Assembly (NCBI RefSeq): GCF_016433145.1
Contig: NC_058136.1
Location: 926,141-990,140 of the forward strand
Source of the DNA: Gracilinanus agilis
Lineage: Eukaryota
Reading direction: 5' to 3'
DNA: 64,000 bases
Shown here: positions 1 through 39,462 of the stretch, one piece after another
How the letters are laid out: each line of letters begins with the position of its first letter
Numbering within the stretch: position 1 is the stretch's first letter
The notes under the pieces: generated by a model
Database searches by the model: none
Told to the model about the DNA's origin: nothing
The model's input: only the letters and a program-made list of their open reading frames with translations
Position numbers and translations under genes: made by a program

Positions 1-183
1 TTGTATCTAATTAGGAAAAATGTTTTCTGTGTCCTGCTTTGAAGGCTTAGAGACTTTGCTTTATATTTTTCAGAGGGAATATGGAATCAGTGGCCTTGAC
101 AAGTCATACTGTGTGCCAGGTGGTATCCTTATGCCTCCATATACTCTATGAGAATTTTCTCTGGCCTCCATCGCTCTGACCCC

Positions 184-253
184 TGGTGATGGTGTCTGGT
201 GCAGTGGATGACCTTGATATCTTCAATGTGTCTGACCAGGCACTAAGAGCTCC
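184..253 (+). repeat. 70-bp copy of the RTE-related segment at 39885-39954 (mirror 39168-39237 on minus)
   Basis: 69/70 identical to 39885-39954; the single mismatch is 226 A vs 39927 G. Flanks are unrelated to the donor flanks. Confidence 0.92.
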
Positions 254-417
254 TTACCCATAGAATTTCTCTTAAGTCTCTGATCAGATCTGCTTCTTGT
301 CCCCATAATTTATTAATCCTGAATGTCAGAATTCTTAGTCTTTGTGGTTTTGATGGTATTTGTCCTTCAATCAGTCTTTTACTAGTGGCTTCCCAGAGGC
401 TTTCTGCATTCTCTAGA

Positions 418-620
418 GGCAACTTGGTGGCATAGTGGATAGAAGTCTGGAGTCAGGAAGACCTGAATTAAAAATCTTGCTTCAGATATTTACAAGCTGT
501 GTAATTCTGGACAAATCACTTAACAAATCACTTAACTTCAGTTTTTTTCAATCTACAGAATGGGGTTAATAGTAGCATTTTCTTCCAATGGCTCTTTTGA
601 GGATAAAATGAGATCTTATG
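418..620 (+). mobile_element. MIR/CORE-type SINE, old (mirror 38801-39003)
   Basis: tRNA-like head ggcaacttggtggcatagtggatag, CORE-like gctgtg...aaatcacttaac, tail gaggataaaatgag; internal 12-bp tandem duplication caaatcacttaa x2. Confidence 0.75.
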
Positions 621-1319
621 CATTACATACTAGTGAAGTAGAGTTACTATAAAAGTAACTCTAGTGGCTGCTTTTGAAAATACACAAATAATTCAGATAA
701 GCATTAAGGAAATTAAGGCTTGAAGAAAAGCACATGTGATTTCATTGGAAAATGTGAAGAGAGGAATGGATCTGCCAGAGACTCTTCTCTAAATTTAAAT
801 TTAATCTCAAGTGAAAAAGAAAAAAAAGAAAACAAAAGGAACCCTTCATGCCTTTCTAAGTAGGTAGTCAGTTCATAAGATCTGACAGTTTGCTGAACCA
901 TGTCTTTTTTTTTTTTTTTTTTACTTTAGGACAAAAATCACAGAATTAGAAAATGAAAGAGCCTCGCTGGACTAAAGAGGCCTTGTCTCTGGCAAAGTAG
1001 TTCATATTTGTGGGTCAACATTTTACTAGAGGTCTCTTCTGCCCTTGCTCCAGGGTTAGATATCATTGAACCTAAAGTAAAACTGTTTTTCTCAGCCCTA
1101 GTCATTATGACATATTGTCACATTGAACAGTAACACCATTCCTCTTTGCCCCTGCAGGGAACCTTGCCTTTGTTTAAGTCCAAATTTATCAAATCTTCTG
1201 TATGATCCTTCCAGAATCATTGGATGATGAGTTGAATGATTGATTCAACCAACAATTAGTTTACATTCTATGCAAGGCTCCCTGTCAGACAAAGAGGAAT
1301 ATAAAACCAAATGGGAGAT

Positions 1320-1540
1320 AGTATTGCATAGAGGAAAGAATTCTGACCTTGGTGTCAAGAGACCTTCATTTGAATCTCATCTCAGGTGATTGCTAGATTT
1401 GTGACCAGAGAAAAGTCACTTAATTCTTGCCAACCTCATTTTCAACTCTAAAATGGCAAAAATACTTGTACTATACAGTGTTCATAGTGTTGTGAGGAAA
1501 CAGATTTTGAAACCTTAAATCCATTTATAAATTATTACTA
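1320..1540 (+). mobile_element. MIR/MIR3-type SINE (mirror 37881-38101)
   Basis: Degenerate CORE (gtgacc...aagtcacttaa...ctcattttc) and MIR-like 3' end gttgtgaggaaa...ccttaaa. Confidence 0.65.
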
Positions 1541-1799
1541 ATCTCTCATCTCAAGTAGCTTATGACCCGATAGAAGAGATAAGATGTTCAACAAACATTT
1601 TATTCATTCGATAAACATTTATTTAAAAAGGAAGATTTTCAAGGCTAGGCACTAGGGGCTCAAAGATAGATAATGATTCAAAAGCTCTGCTGTCCAGAAA
1701 ATTAGTGTCAAAATAGGCTAACTTGGGACACTGACAGACTGGAGCATGTTCAGGGAGGTGCAAACAGGATTGGATATGGATCATTTCATACAGAGATGG

Positions 1800-2058
1800 T
1801 AGGCAGTTAGGTGACACAGTAACCAGTACCAGACCAGGAGTAAGGAAGACATCTTCCTGAATTCAACTCTGACTTTGGATACTAGCTGTATGATTCTGGG
1901 CAAGTCACTTGACCTTGTTTGCCTCAGTTTCCTCATCCATAAAATGTGTTGGAGAAGGAAATGGTGAACTTATCCAGTACCCTTTTCAAGAAAAACTCAA
2001 ATGGGGTCACAATAAGTTGGACATGACTGGAAAATGATTGAATAGCAGCAACAACAAA
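1800..2058 (+). mobile_element. MAR1-like marsupial CORE-SINE with RTE-derived tail (mirror 37363-37621)
   Basis: CORE ctgggcaagtcacttgacc...gcctcagtttcctc followed by gagaaggaaatgg...ccagtac...aagaaaa...caaatggggtcac...ggacatgactg and a caacaa tail. Confidence 0.85.
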
Positions 2059-2064
2059 TGTAAA

Positions 2065-2458
2065 GATGGTCAGAAAGAACTGGCAATATTTAATCTGGCA
2101 AGACAAAACTTTGGGGAACCTGATTGAGCATCTGAAGCATTGCCATGTCAAAATATCTGTAGAATTGTTTGCTTGACTTCAGAGGACAGAATTAGGAGCA
2201 GGAGTGAATGCTGAAGAGAAATAGATTCAGCTTGATATGAGAAGCAAACACCTACTCCCAAATCTCTTCTGATCAGTTAGAGCTGTGCAACAGTGAAATA
2301 GGTCACCTTAAGAGGTAATGGATTCTATCTACTTTACTGGAAATCACCAAGAGGAGACAAGTGACTATTTCAGAGGTATTGTGGAAGGGATTACTACTGT
2401 CCAGGTACAGATCACATTAGATAATATTAAAGGTCCTGTCCATGTCTGTGATTTTTGA
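2065..2458 (+). mobile_element. CR1/L3 LINE 3' fragment (mirror 36963-37356)
   Basis: Resembles the CR1 3' region (...gaggacagaattagga...gattcagcttgatat...ttagagctgtgcaacagtg...aaggtcc...ctgtgatt). Confidence 0.7.
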
Positions 2459-2551
2459 AAATCTATTGTTACGGAGGCAAAAGAACATAAGGAGTTAGCC
2501 AAATGAAAGAAAAGCTTAAGCCTTGGTATAACCAAAGCTATAGTTCTAGAT

Positions 2552-2790
2552 TAGTGGTCCTCAAACTTTTGGGCCTCAGGACTCTTATACATTCATAAAA
2601 GACACTTTCAAGGGGTCCATATGGTCAAAAGTATTTTCAAAACAGCACTAAGACCTTTTAAGTTCTAATTAACTAAACCTCAGCAGATATTTGCATAAAT
2701 AAAAATCATTGGGGTTGGGGATACCAGTCAGTTGTGGAGCCTTACATTTCAAGGAACCCTCCCAGGGAGTCCATTGAGAAACTGGACTGT
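2552..2790. mobile_element. Old hAT-Charlie-like non-autonomous DNA transposon fragment (mirror 36631-36869)
   Basis: Starts tagtggtcctcaaacttttgggcctcagg after ttctagat (hAT-like TIR and CTAG target); the right end is degenerate. Confidence 0.5.
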
Positions 2791-3189
2791 CCATTTCTAA
2801 TGACAAAAGTCACCCTTTCCAATTAACTCAGTAAGCACTTACGAAGAGCTTATATTCAAGACATTGGGTTCAATGCTGAAGATAGAGAAGTAAAAAAAAA
2901 AAGGAAATTACCTTTTCTTTCTAAGAACATATTCTTCTGAAGGAGAAAAGAGAGTTGATTGTACCATCTTGAAATTTCAGAGTTTTGTCTTTATTTGCCT
3001 ATTGTGTGAAAGATATTACAGGTCACTACTGTTGGGTTGGAGGCATACCAATATGAATAAGAAAGTCATTAATCGTGGATTTGAGCTGGAAGGGAACTTA
3101 GGGTTCATCCATTTCAAAGCACTAATTTTATAGATGAAGAAACTGAAGTCTGATGAGATTAAGTGACTTTCCCAAGGTGACACAACTAT

Positions 3190-4030
3190 TGTCTCTGTCC
3201 TCAGGGAGCTTACAAACTAGGCATGCAAAAAGCTATACTGTGGTTATTACACAAAGTAAGCCATTTCTATATTTTTAAGAGTACAATGTGAAAATATCAT
3301 GGGAAATATCTAAAAATGTACCAAAAGAGATCAGAGGAGGGAAACTGGTGGGAGAGATGGATATGGGGAGGCTTCATGGAAGAGGTGATACCTAAGCTGA
3401 GCCTTAATTGGTTGGAATTGACCAGGCAAAGATCAGGTAGCGTGGCCAGGGAGTCTTCCACTTGGAGGGAACATGTGAGCAAATGAATAGCACGTAGGTT
3501 AGTTTGGTTGTTTTGAATTATCGAAGGGGAGAAGACTAATGGGATGGAGAGATTGGGGTCACATTACAAAGGAGGTCATTTGCAAAGCTGCAAATCTGGG
3601 GAGAAATTTATACGTTTATCTATAGACAATAGGAGGTCACTGTAGCTTTTTGAGCAAAAAGGTGACATAAGATCTAGCAGAATTTAAGGAAGATGAACAT
3701 AGTAGTGCTTTGTAGAATGAATAGAAATAAGAAAAGTATGGATGCAGTAAATCAGTTTGGAGACTTTTTCAGCTATCCAGGTAAGAAGGTATTGAAGCCT
3801 TGAACCAGGGCTATGGCCATGGAAAAAGAGGGGAAGGGTTGGTTGGAAGGAATATCATGTGGGTAGAATTTAGTTGTTGCTGGTGGGGAACACAGTGGTG
3901 GAAGGCTGTAGTGGGAAGGGTAGATTGAAGCGGGGGCTGGGAGTAGAAAGAAATAGCTTAAAGATTAGGTGACTGGAAATTTAGTGGTACCTGGAACAGA
4001 TATGTTTTAGGGAAATGAAGAGAAAGTTTT
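3190..4030 (-). mobile_element. L2 LINE fragment, antisense (mirror 35391-36231)
   Basis: Purine-rich, L2-like antisense motifs (ggcttcatggaagaggtga...gctgagcctt...ggaggtcactgtagctttttgagcaaaaaggtgacat...). Confidence 0.7.
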
Positions 4031-4856
4031 CAAGTTTTCTTAAAATGAGGCACGCCCTACCAGGGACTAGTTAGTGCAGTATTTGCCAAGAAAGTAATTC
4101 TCAGTAATCAAACCTTCTATTTTCTTTTTAAAATGACTCTTCTGTCCCTTGTACCCCAGCCAGGAAACAAAGGGGAAATACAGAGTCTCCCCGATATTTT
4201 GTTTGGAGTGAGAAAAGTCCAAAATTACATTGTCGATAAGCGAAAGACACAGGAGTGAAAACCACCCACAAGCCTCAGCAATGAAGTCACTCAGACCCTT
4301 CCTCACCTTGAAGCCAAAAGAATTCCCTTCCTTCCTTCCCCCCCAGCCCCCTTCATTTTTGACAACCTCCTCAAGTCTTCTGTTGGAAAAAAGGAACAGG
4401 TCCCCTTCGATTAAGCTGTGTGAGAACCATGGACTTGGTCAGCCAGAATCCTTTGCCTGTAGTTGTCAACAAAGGCTTGTTTTACTAGGAACAATGACTA
4501 CGCAGGTTTGGGGAGAGTGTTGTGTGCAAAAGATTTAATCAGTAAGCAGCTTGAGCCATACTCAAAATCTCTTTTACATAGTTATTTTGCTGTTTAGGGG
4601 CTATTGTGTTTCTGTCAGTTGGCACCGTCTGAAAAAGGAATTCATCAGTATGCTGGGATGCTTCTAACATAGAAAGCTTGACTCAGTCTTTTTTTTAAAG
4701 TTCTCTTTAATCAGTTTCCACCAGTTTACAGCCCAGTTATTATTGCTGTTTAAGTACAGAAAAGTGATTAAATGATAATGATCTTGGTGCCTGTCCAAGA
4801 TGACAGATTTTTTTCCCCCTGCTTCAGAAATATTGCAGTATCCTGATCATGGTGTT

Positions 4857-4858
<2 letters not shown>

Positions 4859-4892
<34 letters not shown>
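4859..4892 (+). repeat. (AC)17 microsatellite; the mirror at 34531-34562 is (GT)16
   Basis: Counted directly: 34 nt on the left, 32 nt on the right. Confidence 0.95.
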
Positions 4893-4896
<4 letters not shown>

Positions 4897-6487
4897 CTTA
4901 ATCACACAGAAACTAGAAATGAGGGCTCCTGGCAATTGGGAGAGGTATACAGCTAGAGCCAATAGGACTAACTGGGGAGAATTCTTCTGTTGGATTTGGC
5001 TCTTATCAAAAGGGTTTAGTACAAGAAATTCCCTTAGCCTAATTCTTGCAGGGTTTTAATGACCAAGTAAAAGCTGTTGGAAACTAGGAATGGGGGTGGG
5101 GGAATAAGTGGTGGAAAACAAAGTTGGCCTTGAGGCTTAATGCCTCCTTAGTGTGTGGAAGCCCCCTTCATTTGGGGATTGTCCATTCCTATTTTCAAAT
5201 TCTATTGCTAAATACTCTCTCTCCAGTCCATACTTCTGTGTTGTTAAAGGTTAGAAAAGGTGAGTGTGTGAGATAAATCTTTAGGACACTCCTCATATTC
5301 ATTCCAAGTATTTTACTTTATGGTGGACTACAGGGAGATCTAATTAACACATCCACTGGGAACAAAACTTATTTTTAACAGAGTCAGTTTGTGTGTGGAC
5401 AGGGTTGTGGGAACTTCCTGTCTCTTCGGAACCAGGCTGGGAAGAGAGGTGAGGAGGCAGTGGCACTGTCTCAGGTAGGAGCCTCTCTGGAGAAGGAAGG
5501 CAAGCCCTGAAATGATCATGTGCATTCATTCTTGCCTGCACATTGCTGGGAAGGGATGGAGAATCCTTGGGGAGACAAAGAAGCATCATAGTCCTGAAGA
5601 AGGAGAGGCACTATATTTGAAGACAGAGGACAAGGATTTAACAGCTGGTTGTGTTTCTTACTACCTATGCGGCATTGGGCCAAATACTTCCTTGGGTCCT
5701 TCGTTCCTCATTAACAAAATGACCATTGAAGTAGATGGCCTCCTCCAAGGCCATTCCCATATGAAATCTATGATCTTATGATCTTAGGCTATATAGGAAG
5801 TGTATTTCTCTTGCAATATAGAGAGTGATAATGGGAGAGAAGGAATGTATCCCCAAAGATACTCTTATTCCTACCTTTGATAAATAAAGTTACTGGCAAG
5901 AAAAGTAAAAAGAGTGGAAGCCATTCCTGTAATGGAGACTTTCAGTAGGGAAGGTTCTATCCCGATAACTCACATTTTTATAGATCTTTTAAGGTTTATA
6001 AAGCACCTTCTGCTCAATATCTCTGTTAGTTGGGTAGTACAGGGATATATCAATTATCCCCATTTTAAGGATGAGGAAACTGAGACTCTGATAAGTTGGG
6101 AGCTGCCCAAGGTTAATTTTTAATAAGTCCCAGTGTGGAGATTGAACCCAAGTACTCTGAGTCTAGGTCTAGCATGCTTTCCATAATGCAACTCTGCTTC
6201 TCCATAGAGATTATTGATTAATTAGCCAAGAGAAAAACATTAATCAATATATTACTAATTTAAAAATTAATTAATATTCCAGGCACTGTGCTAAATATTA
6301 GGATATCAAGAAAGGCAATAATAACCCCTGCCCTCAAGGAGTTTACATTATAATCGGGGAAGGAGACAACAGGTAAATAAATCATTACAGATAAGAGAAA
6401 TACAGTCAGCTGGTACACTGTGTACAAGAAACTGGAAACTAATATCTGCAGGGAAGAGAGGCAGAATGTATTTCTTTTTTCTTTTTA

Positions 6488-6683
6488 TTAAAAAAAAAAA
6501 ACCTTACCTTTTGCCTTGGAATCAGTACTATATATTGGATCCAAGGCAGAAGAGTGGTAAGGGTGATGGGGGGGGGGGTTAAGTGACTTGCCCAGGGTCA
6601 CATAGCTAGGAAGTGTCTGAGGCCAGATTTGTATCAGGACCTCTAGGCCTGGCTCTCAATCCACTCAGCTACCCAGCTGCCCC
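6488..6683 (-). mobile_element. SINE1_Mdo-like opossum SINE (mirror 32740-32935)
   Basis: Antisense copy of ggggcagctgggtagctgagtggattgagagccaggcctagag...gacacttcctagct...gggcaagtcacttaaccc...ccactcttctgccttgg...ggtaagg. Confidence 0.9.
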
Positions 6684-7022
6684 TTCTAAAAGTCTTTCTT
6701 GACAAATTCAGTCACAAATTTTTCTTCTCTTGATATTGTTTCAAAATGTTTCTCTTCCTTGTTACCAGCCCCCAATTCTCACTGAATCTTGTAGAATTTA
6801 GTAATTATAAATCATTAAATAAGTCAAGTGATGTGAAGATGGGTCCATCTAATATTTGAAGTTTATTTTGTTTGACCAAGTGTTGTATAGACAACTATTA
6901 CTTCCAAACTTACTTGAAGAATCAGTGATGGTGTTGGAGGAGGTCACTCTTCACTTGTGCAAACGGCAACCCTTCCATTCTTTAGCAGATAGTCCTGGAG
7001 ATTTACTGTTATAAAAAAAGAA

Positions 7023-7225
7023 GGGGCAGCTGGGTAGCTCAGTGTATTGAGAACCAGGCCTAGAGATGGGTGGTCCTAGGTTCAAATCTGGCCTCAGACA
7101 CTTCCTAGCTGTGTGACCCTGGGCAAGTCACTTGATCCTATTGCCTACTCTTACCACTCTTCTGCCTTGGAGTCAATCTACAGTATTGACTCCAAGATGG
7201 AAGGTAAGGGTTTAAAAAAATAATT
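7023..7225 (+). mobile_element. SINE1_Mdo-like SINE with target-site duplication (mirror 32198-32400)
   Basis: Full-length head to tail (ggggcagctgggtagctcagtg...ggaaggtaagggtttaaaaaaa); aaaaaaagaag flanks it at 7013-7023 and 7226-7236. Confidence 0.93.
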
Positions 7226-7301
7226 AAAAAAAGAAGAGGAAGAATGCATCATATGTAGAGAGCCTTGACAAACCTTTAAAGTGCCATATAAATGCTAGAT
7301 G

Positions 7302-7302
<1 letters not shown>

Positions 7303-7346
<44 letters not shown>
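7303..7346 (+). repeat. (ATT)n microsatellite, probably an expanded tail of a MIR-like 3' end (mirror 32077-32120)
   Basis: Direct; follows aaagtgccatataaatgctag. It explains the poly-Tyr ORF. Confidence 0.95.
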
Positions 7347-7352
<6 letters not shown>

Positions 7353-8134
7353 CTCTGGTCATGAACTTAATTAAGCTGGGTCTTTTGAAAGATAGGTGTA
7401 TTCTGTTGCTGGTTCTGCACCTAAAGCCCAAAGTTTCTGTTCTGCTGGATAGTCTTCAAAGCCTTGTGATCACTTCCACATTGCAGTGAGGCACTGAAGA
7501 AGGACATTAAATCAATATAGCCCAACTCAACAAGCATCTATTAAGTCCCTACTGAATGTCTGATGATGTACTGGGTAATCTACATCATAAGAGGAATTAA
7601 AGATTAATAAAGAATTAAAGGTGAAAATAATACATTTTCCCCATCATTTCTATCAGCTTTAAAAATAAATCCTGTCAAGACTAGAATTATTTTAAAAATT
7701 GGTGCTACTAATTAATATAAGATCATGGAACTTTATAAAGACTCTTAGAATCATGTAACCATGGAAAAATTTTCTAATAAAAATAAAATAAAGGATGAAT
7801 TTTACAAATAGAAAAAAATAAAGACTCTTAGAGAATAGCTAGTGTATTTTCCAGTCCTTCATTTAACAAAGAGGGAAACTGAGGCCAAGAGAGGGAAAGT
7901 GATTTTTCCAAGGCTATCTTGCTTATAAGTAGTTGAACCATAATTTGCATCCAGAGCCTCTCATTGTAAATTCTGTTTTGTTTTTTTTTCAACTGCATGA
8001 CCTCATAGTGAGGTTGTTGTATGAAGGAAAACCATTGTATTTATCATTCATTTTGTTGTGGGCTGAGGGTAGCCTAGAGTAAAGAAGAATGACCAAAAGG
8101 TCCCCTGCTCCAAACTATTTTACTCAATACATTC

Positions 8135-8250
8135 TCAGTGGTTAGATTGCAAGCTCTTTGAGGGCTGGAACTGTCTTTTGCCTCTTTCTGTATCTCTAGC
8201 ATTTAGCATAGAACCTGGCACATAGTAGGTGCTTAATAAATCTTTTTTTA
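8135..8250 (+). mobile_element. L2 3' end (mirror 31173-31288); a similar fragment lies at ~10735-10800
   Basis: Canonical L2 terminus: gattgcaagctctttgagggc...tagcatttagca...cctggcacatagtaggtgcttaataaat. Confidence 0.88.
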
Positions 8251-9234
8251 TTGGATTGGATATTCATTTTGATTAACAAGTGAATTATAGGTTCTCTGGG
8301 TACTCGCTGGGAGAGACTATGATGGCAATGGGAAACAGGGCTTTAATCATACTTTAATAAGGCACTGAGGACATGAGGGCAAATAGCACAGAAAGAACAT
8401 AGACATGTGGCAAAATGGGTAAAGAAGCAGATGATTTCGAGGCAGGGGATAGGATGGTAAGGCAAAGGCAGGCAACATGAGGAAGAGGATAAGGAGGGGA
8501 GAGGCAGAGAATATCACTCATATATCCATGTATTAAAGTTGGAAACACTAGACAGCATGGGCCTGATGAAGATGGAAGAGTCTTTGGGGGAGGGCTGGTT
8601 TCTGAAGCCTTATTTACATAGGCTTTGGAGGGGAATAGATTCATGCCCTCTGGGGGTTAGTTCATTAACATATCCAAATCATTTCAAAGTTGTCAGTAAA
8701 ATGTTAACCTCAACATGTTTGCATGATCTCGAAATCATCAAAGCCATTTGGCGATCTGCTGGTCTTTATTGTGGAGGTCTGGAATTTGTCTGGAATTTAC
8801 ATATCATAGGATCAAAAGGTGCTGACAGCAAAGTTATAGTTCCCTAGATTCCACATATATTATCAGGATGTGATTTTTGGTTAATATGTTATATAATTTG
8901 TAAATTATGCTCCTTTGAGATGGTTCACATGAGGCTTCAGGGTTCTCCTTTGCATTCTTACTTCCTATTATTATTCCTTTATACTGACTAGTTAGGAACT
9001 TTATTCTGACTACAAGGGAGGGGATGGTCAGGGGAAGCAGAACAATATACAAATTTAACACAACAAAGCTATTCATAATCCATCTGCTTAAGCAAATGAC
9101 AACTAGTTGAAATCTTTCTTCTTGAATATGAGTGGAATATTAGGGAAGAGAGAAGAGGAGAGATAAAAGAAGAAAGATAAAGAAGAAATCTGAGTCAACT
9201 TAATTCAGATTCCAACTCCTTTTTTTATATTAAT

Positions 9235-9460
9235 CATGATAAATAACTCACATTTCAGTAGTGCTTGGAAGTTTACAAAGAAAGCACACAATGATCTTTT
9301 GCTGTAGTGGTGTTATTATTTCTCATTCTACAGATGTGGAAACTGAGGCACAGGGAGATTACATGACTTTACTAAGGCACAGAATTATTAAATGTTATAA
9401 CCCATGCTTTGAACCAAGATCTCTAGCTCCAAAATCCAGTTTTCTTTCCATTATTACATA
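9235..9460 (-). mobile_element. MIR-type SINE (mirror 29963-30188)
   Basis: Antisense CORE attctacagatgtggaaactgaggcacagggag...tttgaaccaagatct. Confidence 0.75.
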
Positions 9461-10428
9461 GTTGCCCAGTTCATCAATCTGTGGGCTCCCAGAAGACCTT
9501 TCACTCTGGGTTTTCTATAATTAAGTAAGGTACTCTTACTGCAGCAGTTCTGAAAATAGAGGATCTGATTTCCTCTTGTGGTTATCTTGATTGGACAAAG
9601 TTTGGAATAAGCCTCTTAGTCCTACCTTGAATGTAGGATGTCAACCTCAACTAACGTTTAAAAAGAATAATATTAGGAAAGAAGCAAGTTTCCAGAATTT
9701 CTCCTCAAAAACCAGTTTTCAAAGGATGTGACATTTGATATGATAGAACCATGAGTATAAACTTCCTCTTTAGCTTTTAGATGTGTCCTTGTAAAATAGC
9801 TGAATAATCCTCATGAACCAATTTTTCTTTCTTTCTTTTTTTTTTAATGACATTATTTTGGGTCAGGAGGCAATTTTTCTTTATACCAAGGTTGGAATTT
9901 CTAAAACAATAACAAAAATATAAACAGTTTATTTTGTAAAAAACCAAGCAATTTCTAAATTAATAAACTACAATTCCAGAAACTATTCTTGCCCTGGACT
10001 TCTTAGGATGCTTCCGGGACTGTTGGATCATAAAAATGCCCCACTGCTTCTTGTGTTCACTATAAGTTTCAAGTAGCCCATAGTGGAATAAACTGGTTGG
10101 CATTTTATCTGAGCTCAAAGCCTGAACTTTGCCTAATGACTTGCATTAGGGTTTATTTTAAGACACCCAAAAGACTGAATTCATCAGCCACATGCAAATC
10201 TCACTAGCTATTGAGCTGAACTTTAAATAGAGTATTTATTTCATCATTATCTTCTTAGAGACTTTTTCTTTGCCCCTGTGATCTTAGAGGAAAGGGATTC
10301 TTTTCCTTCTCTTTCTGTCTTTTTGGGAAACATATTTTTTGGGCTTTTGGCAACAACAGGATAAAGATCTACTGTAAGGAAATCAGCACACACAGACACA
10401 CAAAAATCCTTTCAGTTCTCTGTTTTCA

Positions 10429-10443
10429 GCAATAGGTGGCACC
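10429..10443 (+). promoter_or_regulatory. CTCF-like motif GCAATAGGTGGCACC in unique DNA (mirror 28980-28994, minus)
   Basis: Matches the CCASYAGRKGGCRS core at 12/14 positions. Motif only; no binding evidence. Confidence 0.3.
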
Positions 10444-11546: not shown

Positions 11547-11750
11547 CTTTTTTTTTAAATCCTTACCTTCCATCTTAGAATCAATACTAAGTATTGGTTT
11601 CAAGGCAGAAGAGAGGTAATGGCTAGGCAGTGAGGGTCAAGTGACTTGCCCAGGGTCACACAGCTAGGAAGTGTCTGAGGGCAGATTTGAACCCAGGACC
11701 TCCTGTCTCTGGGCTTGGCTCTAAATTCACTGAGTCACCCAGCTGTCACC
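11547..11750 (-). mobile_element. SINE1_Mdo-like SINE (mirror 27673-27876)
   Basis: Full antisense copy; tgatcaggt is duplicated at 11535-11543 and 11751-11759. Confidence 0.9.
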
Positions 11751-11754
11751 TGAT

Positions 11755-28190: not shown

Positions 28191-28230
28191 GTATTGACAG
28201 CTAAGGATATTGAATGTGGGAAGAGCTGTG
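28191..28230 (+). other. Candidate 40-nt internal exon (only frame 0 open: VLTAKDIECGKSC); mirror 11193-11232, minus
   Basis: Branch-like ccttac, pyrimidine tract ttttgtttatttttcag acceptor, and donor GTG|gtgagc. No homology recognised. Confidence 0.3.
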
Positions 28231-31200
28231 GTGAGCTTATAATAGTATGTTGTTTGTTTGCTTTTTTCCAAAGATGCCCCTACTTCCCAATGTTCATTGG
28301 AATCAAAGAATCTTAGCAATGGATGTCACTTCAGAGGTCATCTAGTAGAACTTCTAAACTAGATGTGAATCCAATTGACAGAAGTTATTCTGCAGGTTCT
28401 TGTGCTTACCCTATTTAGACTCAAAGGAAACATGTTTATCTTTTAAGAAATACAACACACATCATGCTTCTAAACTCATCACTTCACCTTTCCCACAAAA
28501 ACCCTGCCAGGCAAGTAGTATAAATAGCATGATCCCCTTTATATAGATAAGGAAACTCAGAGCAATTAAATTAAGTGCCTACGTCTGTTGACTAAATAAA
28601 ATAACTCTAATGTTCACTACTGGTCAATCAATAAACATTTATTAAGCACCTACTATGTACCATGAACAATGCTAAAGGCACTACACTACAAACACCCTGG
28701 AATTTGGGAAGTGGAAGTTCAGAGCATCATGGAGTCAAAAGGGATCATGAATATCACAAGCATTTAGGCAGGGCTCCACATAAAGTCTCCAACAGAGATG
28801 GTTCACCATTCTGTCCCTCTCACCAGATTTCAGACATGCATGTATATATGTGAAGGAAGCTAGATTTGCAGGAAGACATTTCTTTGCTTTTAGTCATTTA
28901 CAGAGACAGCAGCATGAAATGAAAAATGATAAAAATGATGATGTATCTGTCTATATCCAGCATCAATACAGAAATGGCTGGTGCCACCTATTGCTGAAAA
29001 CAGAGAACTGAAAGGATTTTTGTGTGTCTGTGTGTGCTGATTTCCTTACAGTAGATCTTTATCCTGTTGTTGCCAAAAGCCCAAAAAATATGTTTCCCAA
29101 AAAGACAGAAAGAGAAGGAAAAGAATCCCTTTCCTCTAAGATCACAGGGGCAAAGAAAAAGTCTCTAAGAAGATAATGATGAAATAAATACTCTATTTAA
29201 AGTTCAGCTCAATAGCTAGTGAGATTTGCATGTGGCTGATGAATTCAGTCTTTTGGGTGTCTTAAAATAAACCCTAATGCAAGTCATTAGGCAAAGTTCA
29301 GGCTTTGAGCTCAGATAAAATGCCAACCAGTTTATTCCACTATGGGCTACTTGAAACTTATAGTGAACACAAGAAGCAGTGGGGCATTTTTATGATCCAA
29401 CAGTCCCGGAAGCATCCTAAGAAGTCCAGGGCAAGAATAGTTTCTGGAATTGTAGTTTATTAATTTAGAAATTGCTTGGTTTTTTACAAAATAAACTGTT
29501 TATATTTTTGTTATTGTTTTAGAAATTCCAACCTTGGTATAAAGAAAAATTGCCTCCTGACCCAAAATAATGTCATTAAAAAAAAAAGAAAGAAAGAAAA
29601 ATTGGTTCATGAGGATTATTCAGCTATTTTACAAGGACACATCTAAAAGCTAAAGAGGAAGTTTATACTCATGGTTCTATCATATCAAATGTCACATCCT
29701 TTGAAAACTGGTTTTTGAGGAGAAATTCTGGAAACTTGCTTCTTTCCTAATATTATTCTTTTTAAACGTTAGTTGAGGTTGACATCCTACATTCAAGGTA
29801 GGACTAAGAGGCTTATTCCAAACTTTGTCCAATCAAGATAACCACAAGAGGAAATCAGATCCTCTATTTTCAGAACTGCTGCAGTAAGAGTACCTTACTT
29901 AATTATAGAAAACCCAGAGTGAAAGGTCTTCTGGGAGCCCACAGATTGATGAACTGGGCAACTATGTAATAATGGAAAGAAAACTGGATTTTGGAGCTAG
30001 AGATCTTGGTTCAAAGCATGGGTTATAACATTTAATAATTCTGTGCCTTAGTAAAGTCATGTAATCTCCCTGTGCCTCAGTTTCCACATCTGTAGAATGA
30101 GAAATAATAACACCACTACAGCAAAAGATCATTGTGTGCTTTCTTTGTAAACTTCCAAGCACTACTGAAATGTGAGTTATTTATCATGATTAATATAAAA
30201 AAAGGAGTTGGAATCTGAATTAAGTTGACTCAGATTTCTTCTTTATCTTTCTTCTTTTATCTCTCCTCTTCTCTCTTCCCTAATATTCCACTCATATTCA
30301 AGAAGAAAGATTTCAACTAGTTGTCATTTGCTTAAGCAGATGGATTATGAATAGCTTTGTTGTGTTAAATTTGTATATTGTTCTGCTTCCCCTGACCATC
30401 CCCTCCCTTGTAGTCAGAATAAAGTTCCTAACTAGTCAGTATAAAGGAATAATAATAGGAAGTAAGAATGCAAAGGAGAACCCTGAAGCCTCATGTGAAC
30501 CATCTCAAAGGAGCATAATTTACAAATTATATAACATATTAACCAAAAATCACATCCTGATAATATATGTGGAATCTAGGGAACTATAACTTTGCTGTCA
30601 GCACCTTTTGATCCTATGATATGTAAATTCCAGACAAATTCCAGACCTCCACAATAAAGACCAGCAGATCGCCAAATGGCTTTGATGATTTCGAGATCAT
30701 GCAAACATGTTGAGGTTAACATTTTACTGACAACTTTGAAATGATTTGGATATGTTAATGAACTAACCCCCAGAGGGCATGAATCTATTCCCCTCCAAAG
30801 CCTATGTAAATAAGGCTTCAGAAACCAGCCCTCCCCCAAAGACTCTTCCATCTTCATCAGGCCCATGCTGTCTAGTGTTTCCAACTTTAATACATGGATA
30901 TATGAGTGATATTCTCTGCCTCTCCCCTCCTTATCCTCTTCCTCATGTTGCCTGCCTTTGCCTTACCATCCTATCCCCTGCCTCGAAATCATCTGCTTCT
31001 TTACCCATTTTGCCACATGTCTATGTTCTTTCTGTGCTATTTGCCCTCATGTCCTCAGTGCCTTATTAAAGTATGATTAAAGCCCTGTTTCCCATTGCCA
31101 TCATAGTCTCTCCCAGCGAGTACCCAGAGAACCTATAATTCACTTGTTAATCAAAATGAATATCCAATCCAATAAAAAAAGATTTATTAAGCACCTACTA

Positions 31201-32070
31201 TGTGCCAGGTTCTATGCTAAATGCTAGAGATACAGAAAGAGGCAAAAGACAGTTCCAGCCCTCAAAGAGCTTGCAATCTAACCACTGAGAATGTATTGAG
31301 TAAAATAGTTTGGAGCAGGGGACCTTTTGGTCATTCTTCTTTACTCTAGGCTACCCTCAGCCCACAACAAAATGAATGATAAATACAATGGTTTTCCTTC
31401 ATACAACAACCTCACTATGAGGTCATGCAGTTGAAAAAAAAACAAAACAGAATTTACAATGAGAGGCTCTGGATGCAAATTATGGTTCAACTACTTATAA
31501 GCAAGATAGCCTTGGAAAAATCACTTTCCCTCTCTTGGCCTCAGTTTCCCTCTTTGTTAAATGAAGGACTGGAAAATACACTAGCTATTCTCTAAGAGTC
31601 TTTATTTTTTTCTATTTGTAAAATTCATCCTTTATTTTATTTTTATTAGAAAATTTTTCCATGGTTACATGATTCTAAGAGTCTTTATAAAGTTCCATGA
31701 TCTTATATTAATTAGTAGCACCAATTTTTAAAATAATTCTAGTCTTGACAGGATTTATTTTTAAAGCTGATAGAAATGATGGGGAAAATGTATTATTTTC
31801 ACCTTTAATTCTTTATTAATCTTTAATTCCTCTTATGATGTAGATTACCCAGTACATCATCAGACATTCAGTAGGGACTTAATAGATGCTTGTTGAGTTG
31901 GGCTATATTGATTTAATGTCCTTCTTCAGTGCCTCACTGCAATGTGGAAGTGATCACAAGGCTTTGAAGACTATCCAGCAGAACAGAAACTTTGGGCTTT
32001 AGGTGCAGAACCAGCAACAGAATACACCTATCTTTCAAAAGACCCAGCTTAATTAAGTTCATGACCAGAG

Positions 32071-32121
<51 letters not shown>

Positions 32122-34526
32122 CATCTAGCATTTATATGGCACTTTAAAGGTTTGTCAAGGCTCTCTACATATGATGCATTCTTCCTCTTCTTTTTTTAAT
32201 TATTTTTTTAAACCCTTACCTTCCATCTTGGAGTCAATACTGTAGATTGACTCCAAGGCAGAAGAGTGGTAAGAGTAGGCAATAGGATCAAGTGACTTGC
32301 CCAGGGTCACACAGCTAGGAAGTGTCTGAGGCCAGATTTGAACCTAGGACCACCCATCTCTAGGCCTGGTTCTCAATACACTGAGCTACCCAGCTGCCCC
32401 TTCTTTTTTTATAACAGTAAATCTCCAGGACTATCTGCTAAAGAATGGAAGGGTTGCCGTTTGCACAAGTGAAGAGTGACCTCCTCCAACACCATCACTG
32501 ATTCTTCAAGTAAGTTTGGAAGTAATAGTTGTCTATACAACACTTGGTCAAACAAAATAAACTTCAAATATTAGATGGACCCATCTTCACATCACTTGAC
32601 TTATTTAATGATTTATAATTACTAAATTCTACAAGATTCAGTGAGAATTGGGGGCTGGTAACAAGGAAGAGAAACATTTTGAAACAATATCAAGAGAAGA
32701 AAAATTTGTGACTGAATTTGTCAAGAAAGACTTTTAGAAGGGGCAGCTGGGTAGCTGAGTGGATTGAGAGCCAGGCCTAGAGGTCCTGATACAAATCTGG
32801 CCTCAGACACTTCCTAGCTATGTGACCCTGGGCAAGTCACTTAACCCCCCCCCCCATCACCCTTACCACTCTTCTGCCTTGGATCCAATATATAGTACTG
32901 ATTCCAAGGCAAAAGGTAAGGTTTTTTTTTTTTAATAAAAAGAAAAAAGAAATACATTCTGCCTCTCTTCCCTGCAGATATTAGTTTCCAGTTTCTTGTA
33001 CACAGTGTACCAGCTGACTGTATTTCTCTTATCTGTAATGATTTATTTACCTGTTGTCTCCTTCCCCGATTATAATGTAAACTCCTTGAGGGCAGGGGTT
33101 ATTATTGCCTTTCTTGATATCCTAATATTTAGCACAGTGCCTGGAATATTAATTAATTTTTAAATTAGTAATATATTGATTAATGTTTTTCTCTTGGCTA
33201 ATTAATCAATAATCTCTATGGAGAAGCAGAGTTGCATTATGGAAAGCATGCTAGACCTAGACTCAGAGTACTTGGGTTCAATCTCCACACTGGGACTTAT
33301 TAAAAATTAACCTTGGGCAGCTCCCAACTTATCAGAGTCTCAGTTTCCTCATCCTTAAAATGGGGATAATTGATATATCCCTGTACTACCCAACTAACAG
33401 AGATATTGAGCAGAAGGTGCTTTATAAACCTTAAAAGATCTATAAAAATGTGAGTTATCGGGATAGAACCTTCCCTACTGAAAGTCTCCATTACAGGAAT
33501 GGCTTCCACTCTTTTTACTTTTCTTGCCAGTAACTTTATTTATCAAAGGTAGGAATAAGAGTATCTTTGGGGATACATTCCTTCTCTCCCATTATCACTC
33601 TCTATATTGCAAGAGAAATACACTTCCTATATAGCCTAAGATCATAAGATCATAGATTTCATATGGGAATGGCCTTGGAGGAGGCCATCTACTTCAATGG
33701 TCATTTTGTTAATGAGGAACGAAGGACCCAAGGAAGTATTTGGCCCAATGCCGCATAGGTAGTAAGAAACACAACCAGCTGTTAAATCCTTGTCCTCTGT
33801 CTTCAAATATAGTGCCTCTCCTTCTTCAGGACTATGATGCTTCTTTGTCTCCCCAAGGATTCTCCATCCCTTCCCAGCAATGTGCAGGCAAGAATGAATG
33901 CACATGATCATTTCAGGGCTTGCCTTCCTTCTCCAGAGAGGCTCCTACCTGAGACAGTGCCACTGCCTCCTCACCTCTCTTCCCAGCCTGGTTCCGAAGA
34001 GACAGGAAGTTCCCACAACCCTGTCCACACACAAACTGACTCTGTTAAAAATAAGTTTTGTTCCCAGTGGATGTGTTAATTAGATCTCCCTGTAGTCCAC
34101 CATAAAGTAAAATACTTGGAATGAATATGAGGAGTGTCCTAAAGATTTATCTCACACACTCACCTTTTCTAACCTTTAACAACACAGAAGTATGGACTGG
34201 AGAGAGAGTATTTAGCAATAGAATTTGAAAATAGGAATGGACAATCCCCAAATGAAGGGGGCTTCCATACACTAAGGAGGCATTAAGCCTCAAGGCCAAC
34301 TTTGTTTTCCACCACTTATTCCCCCACCCCCATTCCTAGTTTCCAACAGCTTTTACTTGGTCATTAAAACCCTGCAAGAATTAGGCTAAGGGAATTTCTT
34401 GTACTAAACCCTTTTGATAAGAGCCAAATCCAACAGAAGAATTCTCCCCAGTTAGTCCTATTGGCTCTAGCTGTATACCTCTCCCAATTGCCAGGAGCCC
34501 TCATTTCTAGTTTCTGTGTGATTAAG

Positions 34527-34564
<38 letters not shown>

Positions 34565-35041
34565 AACACCATGATCAGGATACTGCAATATTTCTGAAGC
34601 AGGGGGAAAAAAATCTGTCATCTTGGACAGGCACCAAGATCATTATCATTTAATCACTTTTCTGTACTTAAACAGCAATAATAACTGGGCTGTAAACTGG
34701 TGGAAACTGATTAAAGAGAACTTTAAAAAAAAGACTGAGTCAAGCTTTCTATGTTAGAAGCATCCCAGCATACTGATGAATTCCTTTTTCAGACGGTGCC
34801 AACTGACAGAAACACAATAGCCCCTAAACAGCAAAATAACTATGTAAAAGAGATTTTGAGTATGGCTCAAGCTGCTTACTGATTAAATCTTTTGCACACA
34901 ACACTCTCCCCAAACCTGCGTAGTCATTGTTCCTAGTAAAACAAGCCTTTGTTGACAACTACAGGCAAAGGATTCTGGCTGACCAAGTCCATGGTTCTCA
35001 CACAGCTTAATCGAAGGGGACCTGTTCCTTTTTTCCAACAG

Positions 35042-35114
35042 AAGACTTGAGGAGGTTGTCAAAAATGAAGGGGGCTGGGGGGGAAGGAAGGAAGGGAATT
35101 CTTTTGGCTTCAAG
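35042..35114 (+). other. Candidate 73-nt exon; mirror 4307-4379, minus
   Basis: Acceptor cctgttccttttttccaacag| and donor AAG|gtgagg; two frames open. Lies in a CpG-retaining unique segment. Confidence 0.25.
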
Positions 35115-38100
35115 GTGAGGAAGGGTCTGAGTGACTTCATTGCTGAGGCTTGTGGGTGGTTTTCACTCCTGTGTCTTTCGCTTATCGACAATGTAATTTT
35201 GGACTTTTCTCACTCCAAACAAAATATCGGGGAGACTCTGTATTTCCCCTTTGTTTCCTGGCTGGGGTACAAGGGACAGAAGAGTCATTTTAAAAAGAAA
35301 ATAGAAGGTTTGATTACTGAGAATTACTTTCTTGGCAAATACTGCACTAACTAGTCCCTGGTAGGGCGTGCCTCATTTTAAGAAAACTTGAAAACTTTCT
35401 CTTCATTTCCCTAAAACATATCTGTTCCAGGTACCACTAAATTTCCAGTCACCTAATCTTTAAGCTATTTCTTTCTACTCCCAGCCCCCGCTTCAATCTA
35501 CCCTTCCCACTACAGCCTTCCACCACTGTGTTCCCCACCAGCAACAACTAAATTCTACCCACATGATATTCCTTCCAACCAACCCTTCCCCTCTTTTTCC
35601 ATGGCCATAGCCCTGGTTCAAGGCTTCAATACCTTCTTACCTGGATAGCTGAAAAAGTCTCCAAACTGATTTACTGCATCCATACTTTTCTTATTTCTAT
35701 TCATTCTACAAAGCACTACTATGTTCATCTTCCTTAAATTCTGCTAGATCTTATGTCACCTTTTTGCTCAAAAAGCTACAGTGACCTCCTATTGTCTATA
35801 GATAAACGTATAAATTTCTCCCCAGATTTGCAGCTTTGCAAATGACCTCCTTTGTAATGTGACCCCAATCTCTCCATCCCATTAGTCTTCTCCCCTTCGA
35901 TAATTCAAAACAACCAAACTAACCTACGTGCTATTCATTTGCTCACATGTTCCCTCCAAGTGGAAGACTCCCTGGCCACGCTACCTGATCTTTGCCTGGT
36001 CAATTCCAACCAATTAAGGCTCAGCTTAGGTATCACCTCTTCCATGAAGCCTCCCCATATCCATCTCTCCCACCAGTTTCCCTCCTCTGATCTCTTTTGG
36101 TACATTTTTAGATATTTCCCATGATATTTTCACATTGTACTCTTAAAAATATAGAAATGGCTTACTTTGTGTAATAACCACAGTATAGCTTTTTGCATGC
36201 CTAGTTTGTAAGCTCCCTGAGGACAGAGACAATAGTTGTGTCACCTTGGGAAAGTCACTTAATCTCATCAGACTTCAGTTTCTTCATCTATAAAATTAGT
36301 GCTTTGAAATGGATGAACCCTAAGTTCCCTTCCAGCTCAAATCCACGATTAATGACTTTCTTATTCATATTGGTATGCCTCCAACCCAACAGTAGTGACC
36401 TGTAATATCTTTCACACAATAGGCAAATAAAGACAAAACTCTGAAATTTCAAGATGGTACAATCAACTCTCTTTTCTCCTTCAGAAGAATATGTTCTTAG
36501 AAAGAAAAGGTAATTTCCTTTTTTTTTTTACTTCTCTATCTTCAGCATTGAACCCAATGTCTTGAATATAAGCTCTTCGTAAGTGCTTACTGAGTTAATT
36601 GGAAAGGGTGACTTTTGTCATTAGAAATGGACAGTCCAGTTTCTCAATGGACTCCCTGGGAGGGTTCCTTGAAATGTAAGGCTCCACAACTGACTGGTAT
36701 CCCCAACCCCAATGATTTTTATTTATGCAAATATCTGCTGAGGTTTAGTTAATTAGAACTTAAAAGGTCTTAGTGCTGTTTTGAAAATACTTTTGACCAT
36801 ATGGACCCCTTGAAAGTGTCTTTTATGAATGTATAAGAGTCCTGAGGCCCAAAAGTTTGAGGACCACTAATCTAGAACTATAGCTTTGGTTATACCAAGG
36901 CTTAAGCTTTTCTTTCATTTGGCTAACTCCTTATGTTCTTTTGCCTCCGTAACAATAGATTTTCAAAAATCACAGACATGGACAGGACCTTTAATATTAT
37001 CTAATGTGATCTGTACCTGGACAGTAGTAATCCCTTCCACAATACCTCTGAAATAGTCACTTGTCTCCTCTTGGTGATTTCCAGTAAAGTAGATAGAATC
37101 CATTACCTCTTAAGGTGACCTATTTCACTGTTGCACAGCTCTAACTGATCAGAAGAGATTTGGGAGTAGGTGTTTGCTTCTCATATCAAGCTGAATCTAT
37201 TTCTCTTCAGCATTCACTCCTGCTCCTAATTCTGTCCTCTGAAGTCAAGCAAACAATTCTACAGATATTTTGACATGGCAATGCTTCAGATGCTCAATCA
37301 GGTTCCCCAAAGTTTTGTCTTGCCAGATTAAATATTGCCAGTTCTTTCTGACCATCTTTACATTTGTTGTTGCTGCTATTCAATCATTTTCCAGTCATGT
37401 CCAACTTATTGTGACCCCATTTGAGTTTTTCTTGAAAAGGGTACTGGATAAGTTCACCATTTCCTTCTCCAACACATTTTATGGATGAGGAAACTGAGGC
37501 AAACAAGGTCAAGTGACTTGCCCAGAATCATACAGCTAGTATCCAAAGTCAGAGTTGAATTCAGGAAGATGTCTTCCTTACTCCTGGTCTGGTACTGGTT
37601 ACTGTGTCACCTAACTGCCTACCATCTCTGTATGAAATGATCCATATCCAATCCTGTTTGCACCTCCCTGAACATGCTCCAGTCTGTCAGTGTCCCAAGT
37701 TAGCCTATTTTGACACTAATTTTCTGGACAGCAGAGCTTTTGAATCATTATCTATCTTTGAGCCCCTAGTGCCTAGCCTTGAAAATCTTCCTTTTTAAAT
37801 AAATGTTTATCGAATGAATAAAATGTTTGTTGAACATCTTATCTCTTCTATCGGGTCATAAGCTACTTGAGATGAGAGATTAGTAATAATTTATAAATGG
37901 ATTTAAGGTTTCAAAATCTGTTTCCTCACAACACTATGAACACTGTATAGTACAAGTATTTTTGCCATTTTAGAGTTGAAAATGAGGTTGGCAAGAATTA
38001 AGTGACTTTTCTCTGGTCACAAATCTAGCAATCACCTGAGATGAGATTCAAATGAAGGTCTCTTGACACCAAGGTCAGAATTCTTTCCTCTATGCAATAC

Positions 38101-39462
38101 TATCTCCCATTTGGTTTTATATTCCTCTTTGTCTGACAGGGAGCCTTGCATAGAATGTAAACTAATTGTTGGTTGAATCAATCATTCAACTCATCATCCA
38201 ATGATTCTGGAAGGATCATACAGAAGATTTGATAAATTTGGACTTAAACAAAGGCAAGGTTCCCTGCAGGGGCAAAGAGGAATGGTGTTACTGTTCAATG
38301 TGACAATATGTCATAATGACTAGGGCTGAGAAAAACAGTTTTACTTTAGGTTCAATGATATCTAACCCTGGAGCAAGGGCAGAAGAGACCTCTAGTAAAA
38401 TGTTGACCCACAAATATGAACTACTTTGCCAGAGACAAGGCCTCTTTAGTCCAGCGAGGCTCTTTCATTTTCTAATTCTGTGATTTTTGTCCTAAAGTAA
38501 AAAAAAAAAAAAAAAAGACATGGTTCAGCAAACTGTCAGATCTTATGAACTGACTACCTACTTAGAAAGGCATGAAGGGTTCCTTTTGTTTTCTTTTTTT
38601 TCTTTTTCACTTGAGATTAAATTTAAATTTAGAGAAGAGTCTCTGGCAGATCCATTCCTCTCTTCACATTTTCCAATGAAATCACATGTGCTTTTCTTCA
38701 AGCCTTAATTTCCTTAATGCTTATCTGAATTATTTGTGTATTTTCAAAAGCAGCCACTAGAGTTACTTTCATAGTAACTCTACTTCACTAGTATGTAATG
38801 CATAAGATCTCATTTTATCCTCAAAAGAGCCATTGGAAGAAAATGCTACTATTAACCCCATTCTGTAGATTGAAAAAAACTGAAGTTAAGTGATTTGTTA
38901 AGTGATTTGTCCAGAATTACACAGCTTGTAAATATCTGAAGCAAGATTTTTAATTCAGGTCTTCCTGACTCCAGACTTCTATCCACTATGCCACCAAGTT
39001 GCCTCTAGAGAATGCAGAAAGCCTCTGGGAAGCCACTAGTAAAAGACTGATTGAAGGACAAATACCATCAAAACCACAAAGACTAAGAATTCTGACATTC
39101 AGGATTAATAAATTATGGGGACAAGAAGCAGATCTGATCAGAGACTTAAGAGAAATTCTATGGGTAAGGAGCTCTTAGTGCCTGGTCAGACACATTGAAG
39201 ATATCAAGGTCATCCACTGCACCAGACACCATCACCAGGGGTCAGAGCGATGGAGGCCAGAGAAAATTCTCATAGAGTATATGGAGGCATAAGGATACCA
39301 CCTGGCACACAGTATGACTTGTCAAGGCCACTGATTCCATATTCCCTCTGAAAAATATAAAGCAAAGTCTCTAAGCCTTCAAAGCAGGACACAGAAAACA
39401 TTTTTCCTAATTAGATACAATAATTTCAGAAGAACTACCCTATTCCTCCAGAGAGTCTAGTC

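What the first reader, a model, noticed from the sequence alone, without database searches (positions are those of the whole stretch)
1..39420. 39.4-kb near-perfect palindrome centred on a 500-N gap
Seen: two 19,460-nt arms that are reverse complements. The four differences found total 6 nt (~99.97% identity, although not every base was compared). Established: real mammalian sex-chromosome palindromes have arm identity in this range, maintained by gene conversion, and often carry testis genes. Also established: scaffolders can place an uncollapsed allelic haplotig next to its partner in inverted orientation, joined by a fixed-size gap. Inference: an artefact is more likely, because the gap is a round 500 N, both arms stop at the same point in a microsatellite, and no spacer sequence is visible. 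If real, it would be an unusual marsupial palindrome. The left boundary is not visible because the arm reaches the window edge.
Basis: partly seen in the sequence, partly recalled or inferred. Interest (0 to 1): 0.7.

Follow-up and report, generated by a model that had tools for sequence, protein, structure and literature searches.

The report
Mirror-image 19-kb duplicate around a gap
Two almost identical 19.5-kb stretches lie as mirror images on either side of an unread gap on what seems to be the X chromosome of a male mouse opossum. I could not decide whether this is a true sex-chromosome palindrome or a doubled piece made by the assembly software, because no read depth could be obtained.

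Summary
Window 1-19460 is the reverse complement of 19961-39420 at 99.969% identity. The arms differ by two transitions and two 2-nt length changes, one in an (AC)n run and one in a poly-T run. They are joined by 500 N, and both end in 60 nt of pure (TTCC)n.

- 500 N is the fixed join of 3D-DNA and SALSA2.
- Identical sequence handled by a deterministic assembler stops at the same base.
- Any spacer would lie inside the gap.

The genome is probably Gracilinanus agilis. That assembly came from one adult male (stLFR reads, Supernova, 3D-DNA). Earlier notes place X-linked genes on this same piece. A male marsupial has one X and no X-Y shared region, so an allelic haplotig is not possible there. 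The two substitutions would then mark two real copies.

Against a real palindrome: short-read assemblers usually collapse such repeats, false duplicates beside gaps are common, the X placement is untested, and the arms carry no gene.

My odds:
- real inverted duplication: 0.45
- false duplication: 0.38
- real copies, arrangement unproven: 0.13

The parts
1..19460 (+). Left arm. It is cut by the window edge, so its outer boundary is unknown.
   Evidence: Reverse complement of 19961-39420, 99.969% identical over 19,462 columns.
19401..19460 (+). 60 nt of pure (TTCC)n ending the left contig.
   Evidence: A 61-nt pure (ATAG)n at 50127-50187 is read through, so the stop marks a longer, unresolved microsatellite.
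19461..19960 (.). Assembly gap of 500 N. This is the fixed-size join of a Hi-C scaffolder. Its letters were neither looked up nor filled.
   Evidence: 500 N is the default in 3D-DNA and SALSA2 (PMC9292758). 3D-DNA v1.12 was used for the G. agilis assembly (PMC8390783).
19961..20020 (+). 60 nt of pure (GGAA)n starting the right contig. It is the exact mirror of 19401-19460.
19961..39420 (-). Right arm.
651..651 (+). Substitution between the arms: A here, G in the mirrored right arm at 38770. It lies in the loop of a 9-bp local hairpin and is not a CpG site.
4859..4860 (+). One extra AC unit in (AC)n: 17.5 units here against 16.5 at 34530-34562.
5155..5155 (+). Substitution between the arms: G here, A in the mirrored right arm at 34268. 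Not a CpG site.
16086..16095 (+). Poly-T of 10 nt (start coordinate approximate), against 12 in the right arm (A run 23316-23327).
   Evidence: Homopolymer length is the main error class of Supernova (PMC5411770; PMC6191289).
39421..64000 (+). Continuation of the right contig with no N. Its status is unknown: it is either more arm, with its partner lying left of the window, or unique flank.
   Evidence: It has no inverted or direct partner inside the window.

Best explanation
Two real, paralogous copies of a stretch of at least 19.5 kb lie head to head on the X chromosome of the sequenced male. In other words, this is a genuine inverted duplication of the sex-chromosome palindrome kind. Its centre starts with a long (TTCC)n microsatellite on each side and could not be assembled from 100-nt reads. 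Each arm was assembled outward from its own flank. The linked-read barcodes kept the two versions apart at the few sites where they differ. Both contigs died at the same base of the microsatellite, and 3D-DNA then joined them with its standard 500 N.

The near-identity (1 substitution per 10 kb) would come either from arm-to-arm gene conversion, as in primate X and Y palindromes, or from a very recent duplication.

What is shown: the mirror structure, the four differences and the fixed gap. What is inferred from a paper and from earlier notes: the species, the male sex and X linkage. What is inferred only: that both copies exist in the DNA, and that gene conversion acts on them.
For: The arms are at least 19,460 nt long and 99.969% identical in inverted orientation. 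This meets the published working criteria for X palindromes, arms >8 kb and identity >99% (PMC8327919).

The genome fits Gracilinanus agilis AgileGrace. It has seven pieces, matching 2n=14. Earlier notes call it a small American or mouse opossum. It has 500-N joins. The best-holding sequencing run dates from 2021. That assembly is from one adult male, built with stLFR reads, Supernova 2.1.1, GapCloser and 3D-DNA.

The same piece carries ADGRG4 18.4 Mb beyond the window end and PLXNB3/SLC6A8 70.1 Mb beyond it. Both are X markers. Marsupial X and Y share no homology (PMC1557784), so a second allele cannot exist at an X locus in a male.

Two transitions in a roughly 100x short-read assembly are unlikely to be consensus errors.

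For alleles in an outbred animal, two or fewer substitutions in 19.5 kb has probability 0.07-0.14 at pi = 0.2-0.1%. Haplotype-type false duplicates concentrate in more divergent regions, not less divergent ones (PMC9516828).

A pure duplicate would have almost no uniquely mapping Hi-C reads with which to be anchored. This last point is my inference.

No other near-perfect duplicate around a gap was noted in 625 windows of this genome.
Against: Short-read whole-genome assemblers normally collapse near-identical duplications (PMC8327919), so seeing both arms is itself unusual.

A gap between two copies on one scaffold is a listed hallmark of false duplication (PMC9516828). Supernova plus 3D-DNA assemblies are known to need duplicate purging.

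The orientation of short pieces in Hi-C scaffolds is unreliable.

Species, sex and X linkage rest on a paper and on unchecked earlier notes. All same-piece notes lie beyond the window end, so the window may sit near the scaffold's start, where mis-anchored pieces gather (my inference).

The arms hold no recognisable gene: there is no ORF of 110 aa or more, and the ten longest arm ORFs give no Pfam hit. By contrast, 21 of 26 human X palindromes carry genes.

Inverted repeats and palindromes were reported as rare on marsupial X chromosomes (PMC3308322).

Two of the four differences are of the error-prone repeat-length type.
Confidence: 0.45

Rival explanations
1. False duplication. One genomic segment is present twice in the assembly. 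The extra copy came out of Supernova as a separate scaffold, and 3D-DNA put it beside its twin in an arbitrary, here inverted, orientation. There are two sub-cases. (a) The pair is really autosomal, or otherwise diploid, and was anchored wrongly on the X scaffold; the copies are then the two haplotypes, a heterotype duplicate. (b) The pair is truly X-linked, and the second copy is an error-driven duplicate of the same molecule, a homotype duplicate.
For: A gap lies between the two copies on one scaffold, and the join is fixed-size. This is a listed hallmark of false duplication (PMC9516828).

Homotype duplicates outweighed heterotype ones in an Illumina-only assembly, 27.2 against 13.7 Mb.

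Supernova v2 plus 3D-DNA assemblies needed purge_dups afterwards.

Two of the four differences are repeat-length differences, Supernova's main error class.

Real near-identical repeats are normally collapsed by short-read assembly.

There is no gene cargo.

The window seems to lie near the start of the scaffold.
Against: Sub-case (a) needs a diploid locus, but the piece carries X markers and the animal is male. It also predicts many more substitutions than two, and it predicts a region of raised divergence.

Sub-case (b) must explain two transitions at about 100x coverage. It must also explain how a copy with no uniquely mapping Hi-C reads was anchored (inference).

Supernova flattens closed bubbles to one branch and drops reverse-complement edges. 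Two 19-kb paths that differ at sites 4-11 kb apart are therefore not its expected output for one locus (inference).

No similar case was noted in 625 other windows.
Confidence: 0.38
2. Two real copies exist in the genome, but the head-to-head arrangement is only the scaffolder's guess. The copies could be tandem, or some distance apart on the X, or one could be on the Y. Each would be followed by its own long (TTCC)n.
For: It shares the support for two real sequence versions in a male. Hi-C cannot orient short pieces reliably, and reads inside 99.97%-identical arms map ambiguously (plus inference).
Against: 3D-DNA did place the two microsatellite ends facing each other. Inverted arrangement is the one known to keep arms this similar on sex chromosomes. 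A tandem pair this similar would have to be very young. Marsupial X and Y are held to share no homologous region.
Confidence: 0.13

Closest known systems
Large palindromes of primate X chromosomes (human P1-P26; Jackson et al. 2021, PMC8327919)
   Same: Inverted arms longer than 8 kb. Arm-to-arm identity above 99%, here 99.97% against values up to 99.99% in human. Location on an X chromosome. A structurally difficult centre.
   Different: Presence of both arms in the DNA is unproven here. The spacer is unread. No protein-coding gene was found in the arms, whereas 21 of 26 human ones carry genes, and every one conserved between human, chimpanzee and macaque does. The host is a marsupial, where such structures were reported as rare (PMC3308322).
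Human Y palindromes P1-P8, kept alike by arm-to-arm gene conversion (PMC8600007 abstract; the 99.97% figure is from my own knowledge of Skaletsky et al. 2003)
   Same: The level of arm identity is the same, and the differences are a few isolated substitutions plus repeat-length changes.
   Different: Those palindromes are far larger, carry testis gene families and were proven by clone-based sequencing. Here there is only a short-read scaffold.
False duplications in genome assemblies, heterotype and homotype (Ko et al. 2022, PMC9516828)
   Same: Two copies lie on the same scaffold, separated by an assembly gap, in a short-read or linked-read assembly scaffolded with Hi-C.
   Different: Heterotype duplicates need a diploid locus and sit in unusually divergent regions. 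This locus is probably hemizygous, and its copies differ by 0.01% in substitutions. The depth and k-mer criteria could not be tested.

Membership tests
Mammalian sex-chromosome palindrome (criteria of PMC8327919) | Arms longer than 8 kb | tested here: met
   At least 19,460 nt per arm, cut by the window edge.
Mammalian sex-chromosome palindrome (criteria of PMC8327919) | Arm-to-arm identity above 99% | tested here: met
   99.969% over 19,462 columns, with 2 substitutions and 2 two-base indels.
Mammalian sex-chromosome palindrome (criteria of PMC8327919) | Arms in inverted orientation around a spacer in the real chromosome | tested here: inconclusive
   The arms are inverted in the scaffold. 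However, the join is a 500-N Hi-C join whose orientation is not reliable for short pieces, and the spacer is unread.
Mammalian sex-chromosome palindrome (criteria of PMC8327919) | Both arms exist in the DNA (double depth relative to single-copy flank) | not testable with these tools
Mammalian sex-chromosome palindrome (criteria of PMC8327919) | Lies on a sex chromosome | not tested
   This rests on earlier notes that place ADGRG4 and PLXNB3/SLC6A8 on the same piece, and on chr7 = X in PMC8390783. No X-linked gene lies in this window.
Mammalian sex-chromosome palindrome (criteria of PMC8327919) | Gene cargo in the arms (usual, not defining: 21 of 26 in human) | tested here: not met
   No ORF of 110 aa or more outside the N run within the arms. 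No Pfam hit for the ten longest arm ORFs. No Rfam or tRNA hit. Short exons were not excluded.
False duplication of an assembly (criteria of PMC9516828) | Gap between the duplicated pair on the same scaffold | tested here: met
   500 N at 19461-19960 lies directly between the copies.
False duplication of an assembly (criteria of PMC9516828) | Half depth (heterotype) or very low depth (homotype) on the copies | not testable with these tools
   No reads could be laid.
False duplication of an assembly (criteria of PMC9516828) | Heterotype: a diploid locus with haplotypes more divergent than the genome average | tested here: not met
   Substitution divergence is 1 per 10 kb. P(two or fewer substitutions | alleles) is 0.07-0.14. 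The locus is probably on the single X of a male; this last point comes from literature and notes, not from a test.
False duplication of an assembly (criteria of PMC9516828) | Discordant linked reads or barcodes across the pair | not testable with these tools
   The stLFR reads are held at CNGB (CNP0001147) and cannot be reached here.

The most novel reading that the evidence does not exclude
A genuine, gene-poor palindrome with arms of at least 19.5 kb, at 99.97% arm identity, on the X chromosome of a didelphid marsupial. [quoted passage not shown] This would show that large X palindromes are not confined to placental mammals, and that they can persist without an obvious protein-coding cargo.
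Probability: 0.45. Interest if true: 0.55.

Novelty: new member of a known kind. Interest (0 to 1): 0.35.

Why it matters
If it is real, it is one of the few large X-chromosome palindromes seen in a marsupial. A 2012 review suggested that such structures might be specific to placental mammals (PMC3308322). A gene-less example would also sit oddly with the view that selection on gene families is what preserves X palindromes (PMC8327919).

If it is an artefact, it is a useful warning. On a hemizygous chromosome the usual "haplotig" label cannot apply, so either a contig pair is anchored on the wrong chromosome or the assembler duplicated one molecule.

Either way, a single depth measurement in one male settles it, because in a male the X gives a clean 1x against 2x contrast.

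Tried and rejected
- **The look-up of encoding contigs** was tried in order to get the record name, the coordinates and up to 10 kb left of the window.
- **ORFs over the two substitutions.** I looked for ORFs spanning them, to look up both versions by exact protein. No ATG-started ORF of 30 aa or more covers either site, so the idea was dropped.
- **The search of earlier findings.** The 'near' look-up was blank. Word searches for other near-perfect duplicates around gaps in this genome found none. The species name is not in the notes.
- **A k-mer-limit explanation of the contig end.** The pure run is 60 nt, and a 61-nt pure (ATAG)n is read through elsewhere. This fits no known Supernova k exactly, so I claim only a deterministic stop.
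- **Supplement of the genome paper.** It is not held, so I have no heterozygosity estimate and no Supernova output style.
- **Literature on a Supernova-specific inverted-duplicate artefact.** Nothing specific was found.
- **Rfam, tRNA and Pfam scans of the arms.** All empty.
- **Foldback chimeric reads.** Rejected, because they act at read scale, not at 19 kb, and would leave no gap.
Full report
**1. The observation**

The window holds one N run, 19461-19960, of exactly 500 N. BLASTN of 1-19460 against the rest of the window gives a single minus-strand alignment to 39420-19961. It is 99.969% identical over 19,462 columns.

A global alignment places four differences:
- A/G at 651, against 38770.
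- One extra AC unit at 4859-4860 in an (AC)n run.
- G/A at 5155, against 34268.
- A poly-T of 10 against 12, at 16095 against 23326-23327.

Both arms touch the gap with 60 nt of pure (TTCC)n/(GGAA)n. The left arm reaches window position 1. So 19,460 nt is a minimum arm length, and 39421-64000 may be either more arm or flank. That stretch has no partner inside the window.

The two sides of the gap are mirror images. Nothing shows that they are continuous. The long ORFs listed across the gap are only translated N.

**2. What lies in the arms**

- No Rfam family and no tRNA.
- No ORF of 110 aa or more apart from the N artefacts.
- No Pfam match for the ten longest arm ORFs.
- No CpG island. CpG observed/expected is 0.09 for the whole window.

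The arms are ordinary AT-rich, repeat-bearing, apparently non-coding DNA with several microsatellites. Short exons cannot be excluded.

**3. Which genome, and how it was built**

Earlier notes of this scan describe the genome as a small American or mouse opossum with notes on seven pieces. The sequencing-run search found one strong holder, dated 2021 (X23, 0.94 of sampled words).

This fits the Gracilinanus agilis assembly (PMC8390783):
- 2n=14, with seven pseudochromosomes.
- One adult male, LMUSP501.
- stLFR linked reads of 2 x 100 nt, assembled with Supernova 2.1.1 and GapCloser.
- Scaffolding with 3D-DNA 1.12 and Juicebox.
- Contig N50 of 57 kb.
- chr7 is homologous to the Monodelphis X.

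**4.

- 500 N is the default join of 3D-DNA and SALSA2 for every join (PMC9292758). It says only that two separate assembler scaffolds were joined by Hi-C.
- Stopping at the same base is what a deterministic assembler does with two near-identical sequences that run into a microsatellite too long for 100-nt reads, whatever the origin of the two sequences. A 61-nt pure (ATAG)n elsewhere is read through, so the (TTCC)n must be longer than what is shown.
- A missing spacer is uninformative, because the spacer would lie in the gap.

**5. The new element: a male X**

Earlier notes place two loci on the same piece. An SSU72 retrogene beside ADGRG4 lies 18.4 Mb beyond the window end, and PLXNB3/SLC6A8 lies 70.1 Mb beyond it. 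These are X-linked loci. I did not check these notes myself.

Marsupial X and Y are held to share no homologous region (PMC1557784).

Of the four differences, two are repeat-length changes. These are the main error class of Supernova (PMC5411770; PMC6191289) and count for little. The two transitions are harder to dismiss at about 100x coverage. They point to two real sequence versions in the DNA.

Even if the locus were diploid, two or fewer substitutions in 19.5 kb has probability only 0.07-0.14 for a nucleotide diversity of 0.2-0.1%. Haplotype-type false duplicates cluster where haplotypes are more divergent than average (PMC9516828).

One substitution per 10 kb is, on the other hand, typical of sex-chromosome palindromes (PMC8327919).

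**6. What speaks for an artefact**

- A gap between two copies on one scaffold is a listed hallmark of false duplication. In an Illumina-only assembly, error-driven duplicates even outweighed haplotype duplicates.
- Supernova plus 3D-DNA assemblies have needed duplicate purging.
- Short-read whole-genome assembly usually collapses near-identical duplications, so a resolved palindrome is unexpected.
- Hi-C cannot orient short pieces reliably.
- All same-piece notes lie beyond the window end. The window may therefore sit near the start of the X scaffold, where poorly supported pieces tend to collect (my inference). A mis-anchored autosomal pair is possible.
- The arms carry no gene, unlike most primate X palindromes.
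- Inverted repeats and palindromes were reported as rare on marsupial X chromosomes (PMC3308322).

**7. Weighing**

I see no natural route in Supernova from one hemizygous locus to two 19-kb paths that differ at sites 4-11 kb apart. Closed bubbles are flattened, one megabubble arm is kept, and reverse-complement edges are dropped.

Two copies with different outer flanks and a dead end at the microsatellite would escape that flattening. Alleles next to a very divergent haplotype block would escape it too. This is inference about software behaviour, not a test.

A pure duplicate would also have almost no uniquely mapping Hi-C reads to anchor it (inference).

No other near-perfect duplicate around a gap was noted in 625 windows of this genome. 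So this is not an obviously pervasive artefact.

I put the chance that the locus is truly hemizygous at about 0.7. That gives these odds:
- real inverted duplication: 0.45
- false duplication: 0.38
- real copies in an unproven arrangement: 0.13
- other: 0.04

- Only Logan contigs were on offer, so depth would not have been available in any case.
- The gap's letters were neither looked up nor filled.

**9. Verdict**

The structure in the sequence is confirmed exactly. Whether it exists in the animal is open, at roughly even odds.

If real, it is a new member of a known kind, a marsupial X palindrome without evident cargo, and of moderate interest. If not, it is an assembly duplicate of an unusual type, since it sits on a chromosome present in only one copy.

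One depth measurement in this male decides it.

Noticed in passing
window 39463-39669: A 207-bp miniature inverted-repeat element. Its terminal inverted repeats begin CAGGGGT(C/G)GGCA, and it is flanked by a perfect 8-bp target-site duplication, GTCTAGTC. That is hAT-like by duplication length. It is the only copy of these ends in the window.
   Followed up: partly
window 39168-39237 and 39885-39954: A 70-nt inverted repeat, 69/70 identical, with 647 nt between the copies. It brackets the small element above and straddles the visible end of the right arm at 39420. The sequence looks like the tail of a common marsupial SINE present in two orientations. The very high identity over just 70 nt is unexplained.
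   Followed up: partly
window 1-6000: A small run from the same study as the likely source sample (X24, 101 million letters, kind unknown) holds 21% of the sampled words of this stretch. If it is one of the study's RNA-seq runs, about 1 kb of the outer arm is transcribed in kidney, muscle or liver. This could not be checked, because no reads could be laid.
   Followed up: no
window 7027-7220 and 11550-11745 (mirrored at 27678-27873 and 32203-32396): Two roughly 195-nt repeat copies, 86% alike, lie in opposite orientation inside each arm. They are ordinary interspersed-repeat copies.
   Followed up: no
window 63421-63693 and 63514-63632: An ORF rich in E, K, N and S with a 63-nt unit repeated 1.9 times. 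It looks like a decayed LINE-1 ORF1 coiled-coil region.
   Followed up: no
window 48063-48576: A purine-rich low-complexity block (AG-rich imperfect 22-26-nt repeats). It produces the only long ORF outside the gap (168 aa of E/K/R/G). It is probably not coding.
   Followed up: no
whole window: CpG observed/expected is only 0.09, and there is no CpG-island-like 500-nt window. G+C content is 28-41%.
   Followed up: yes
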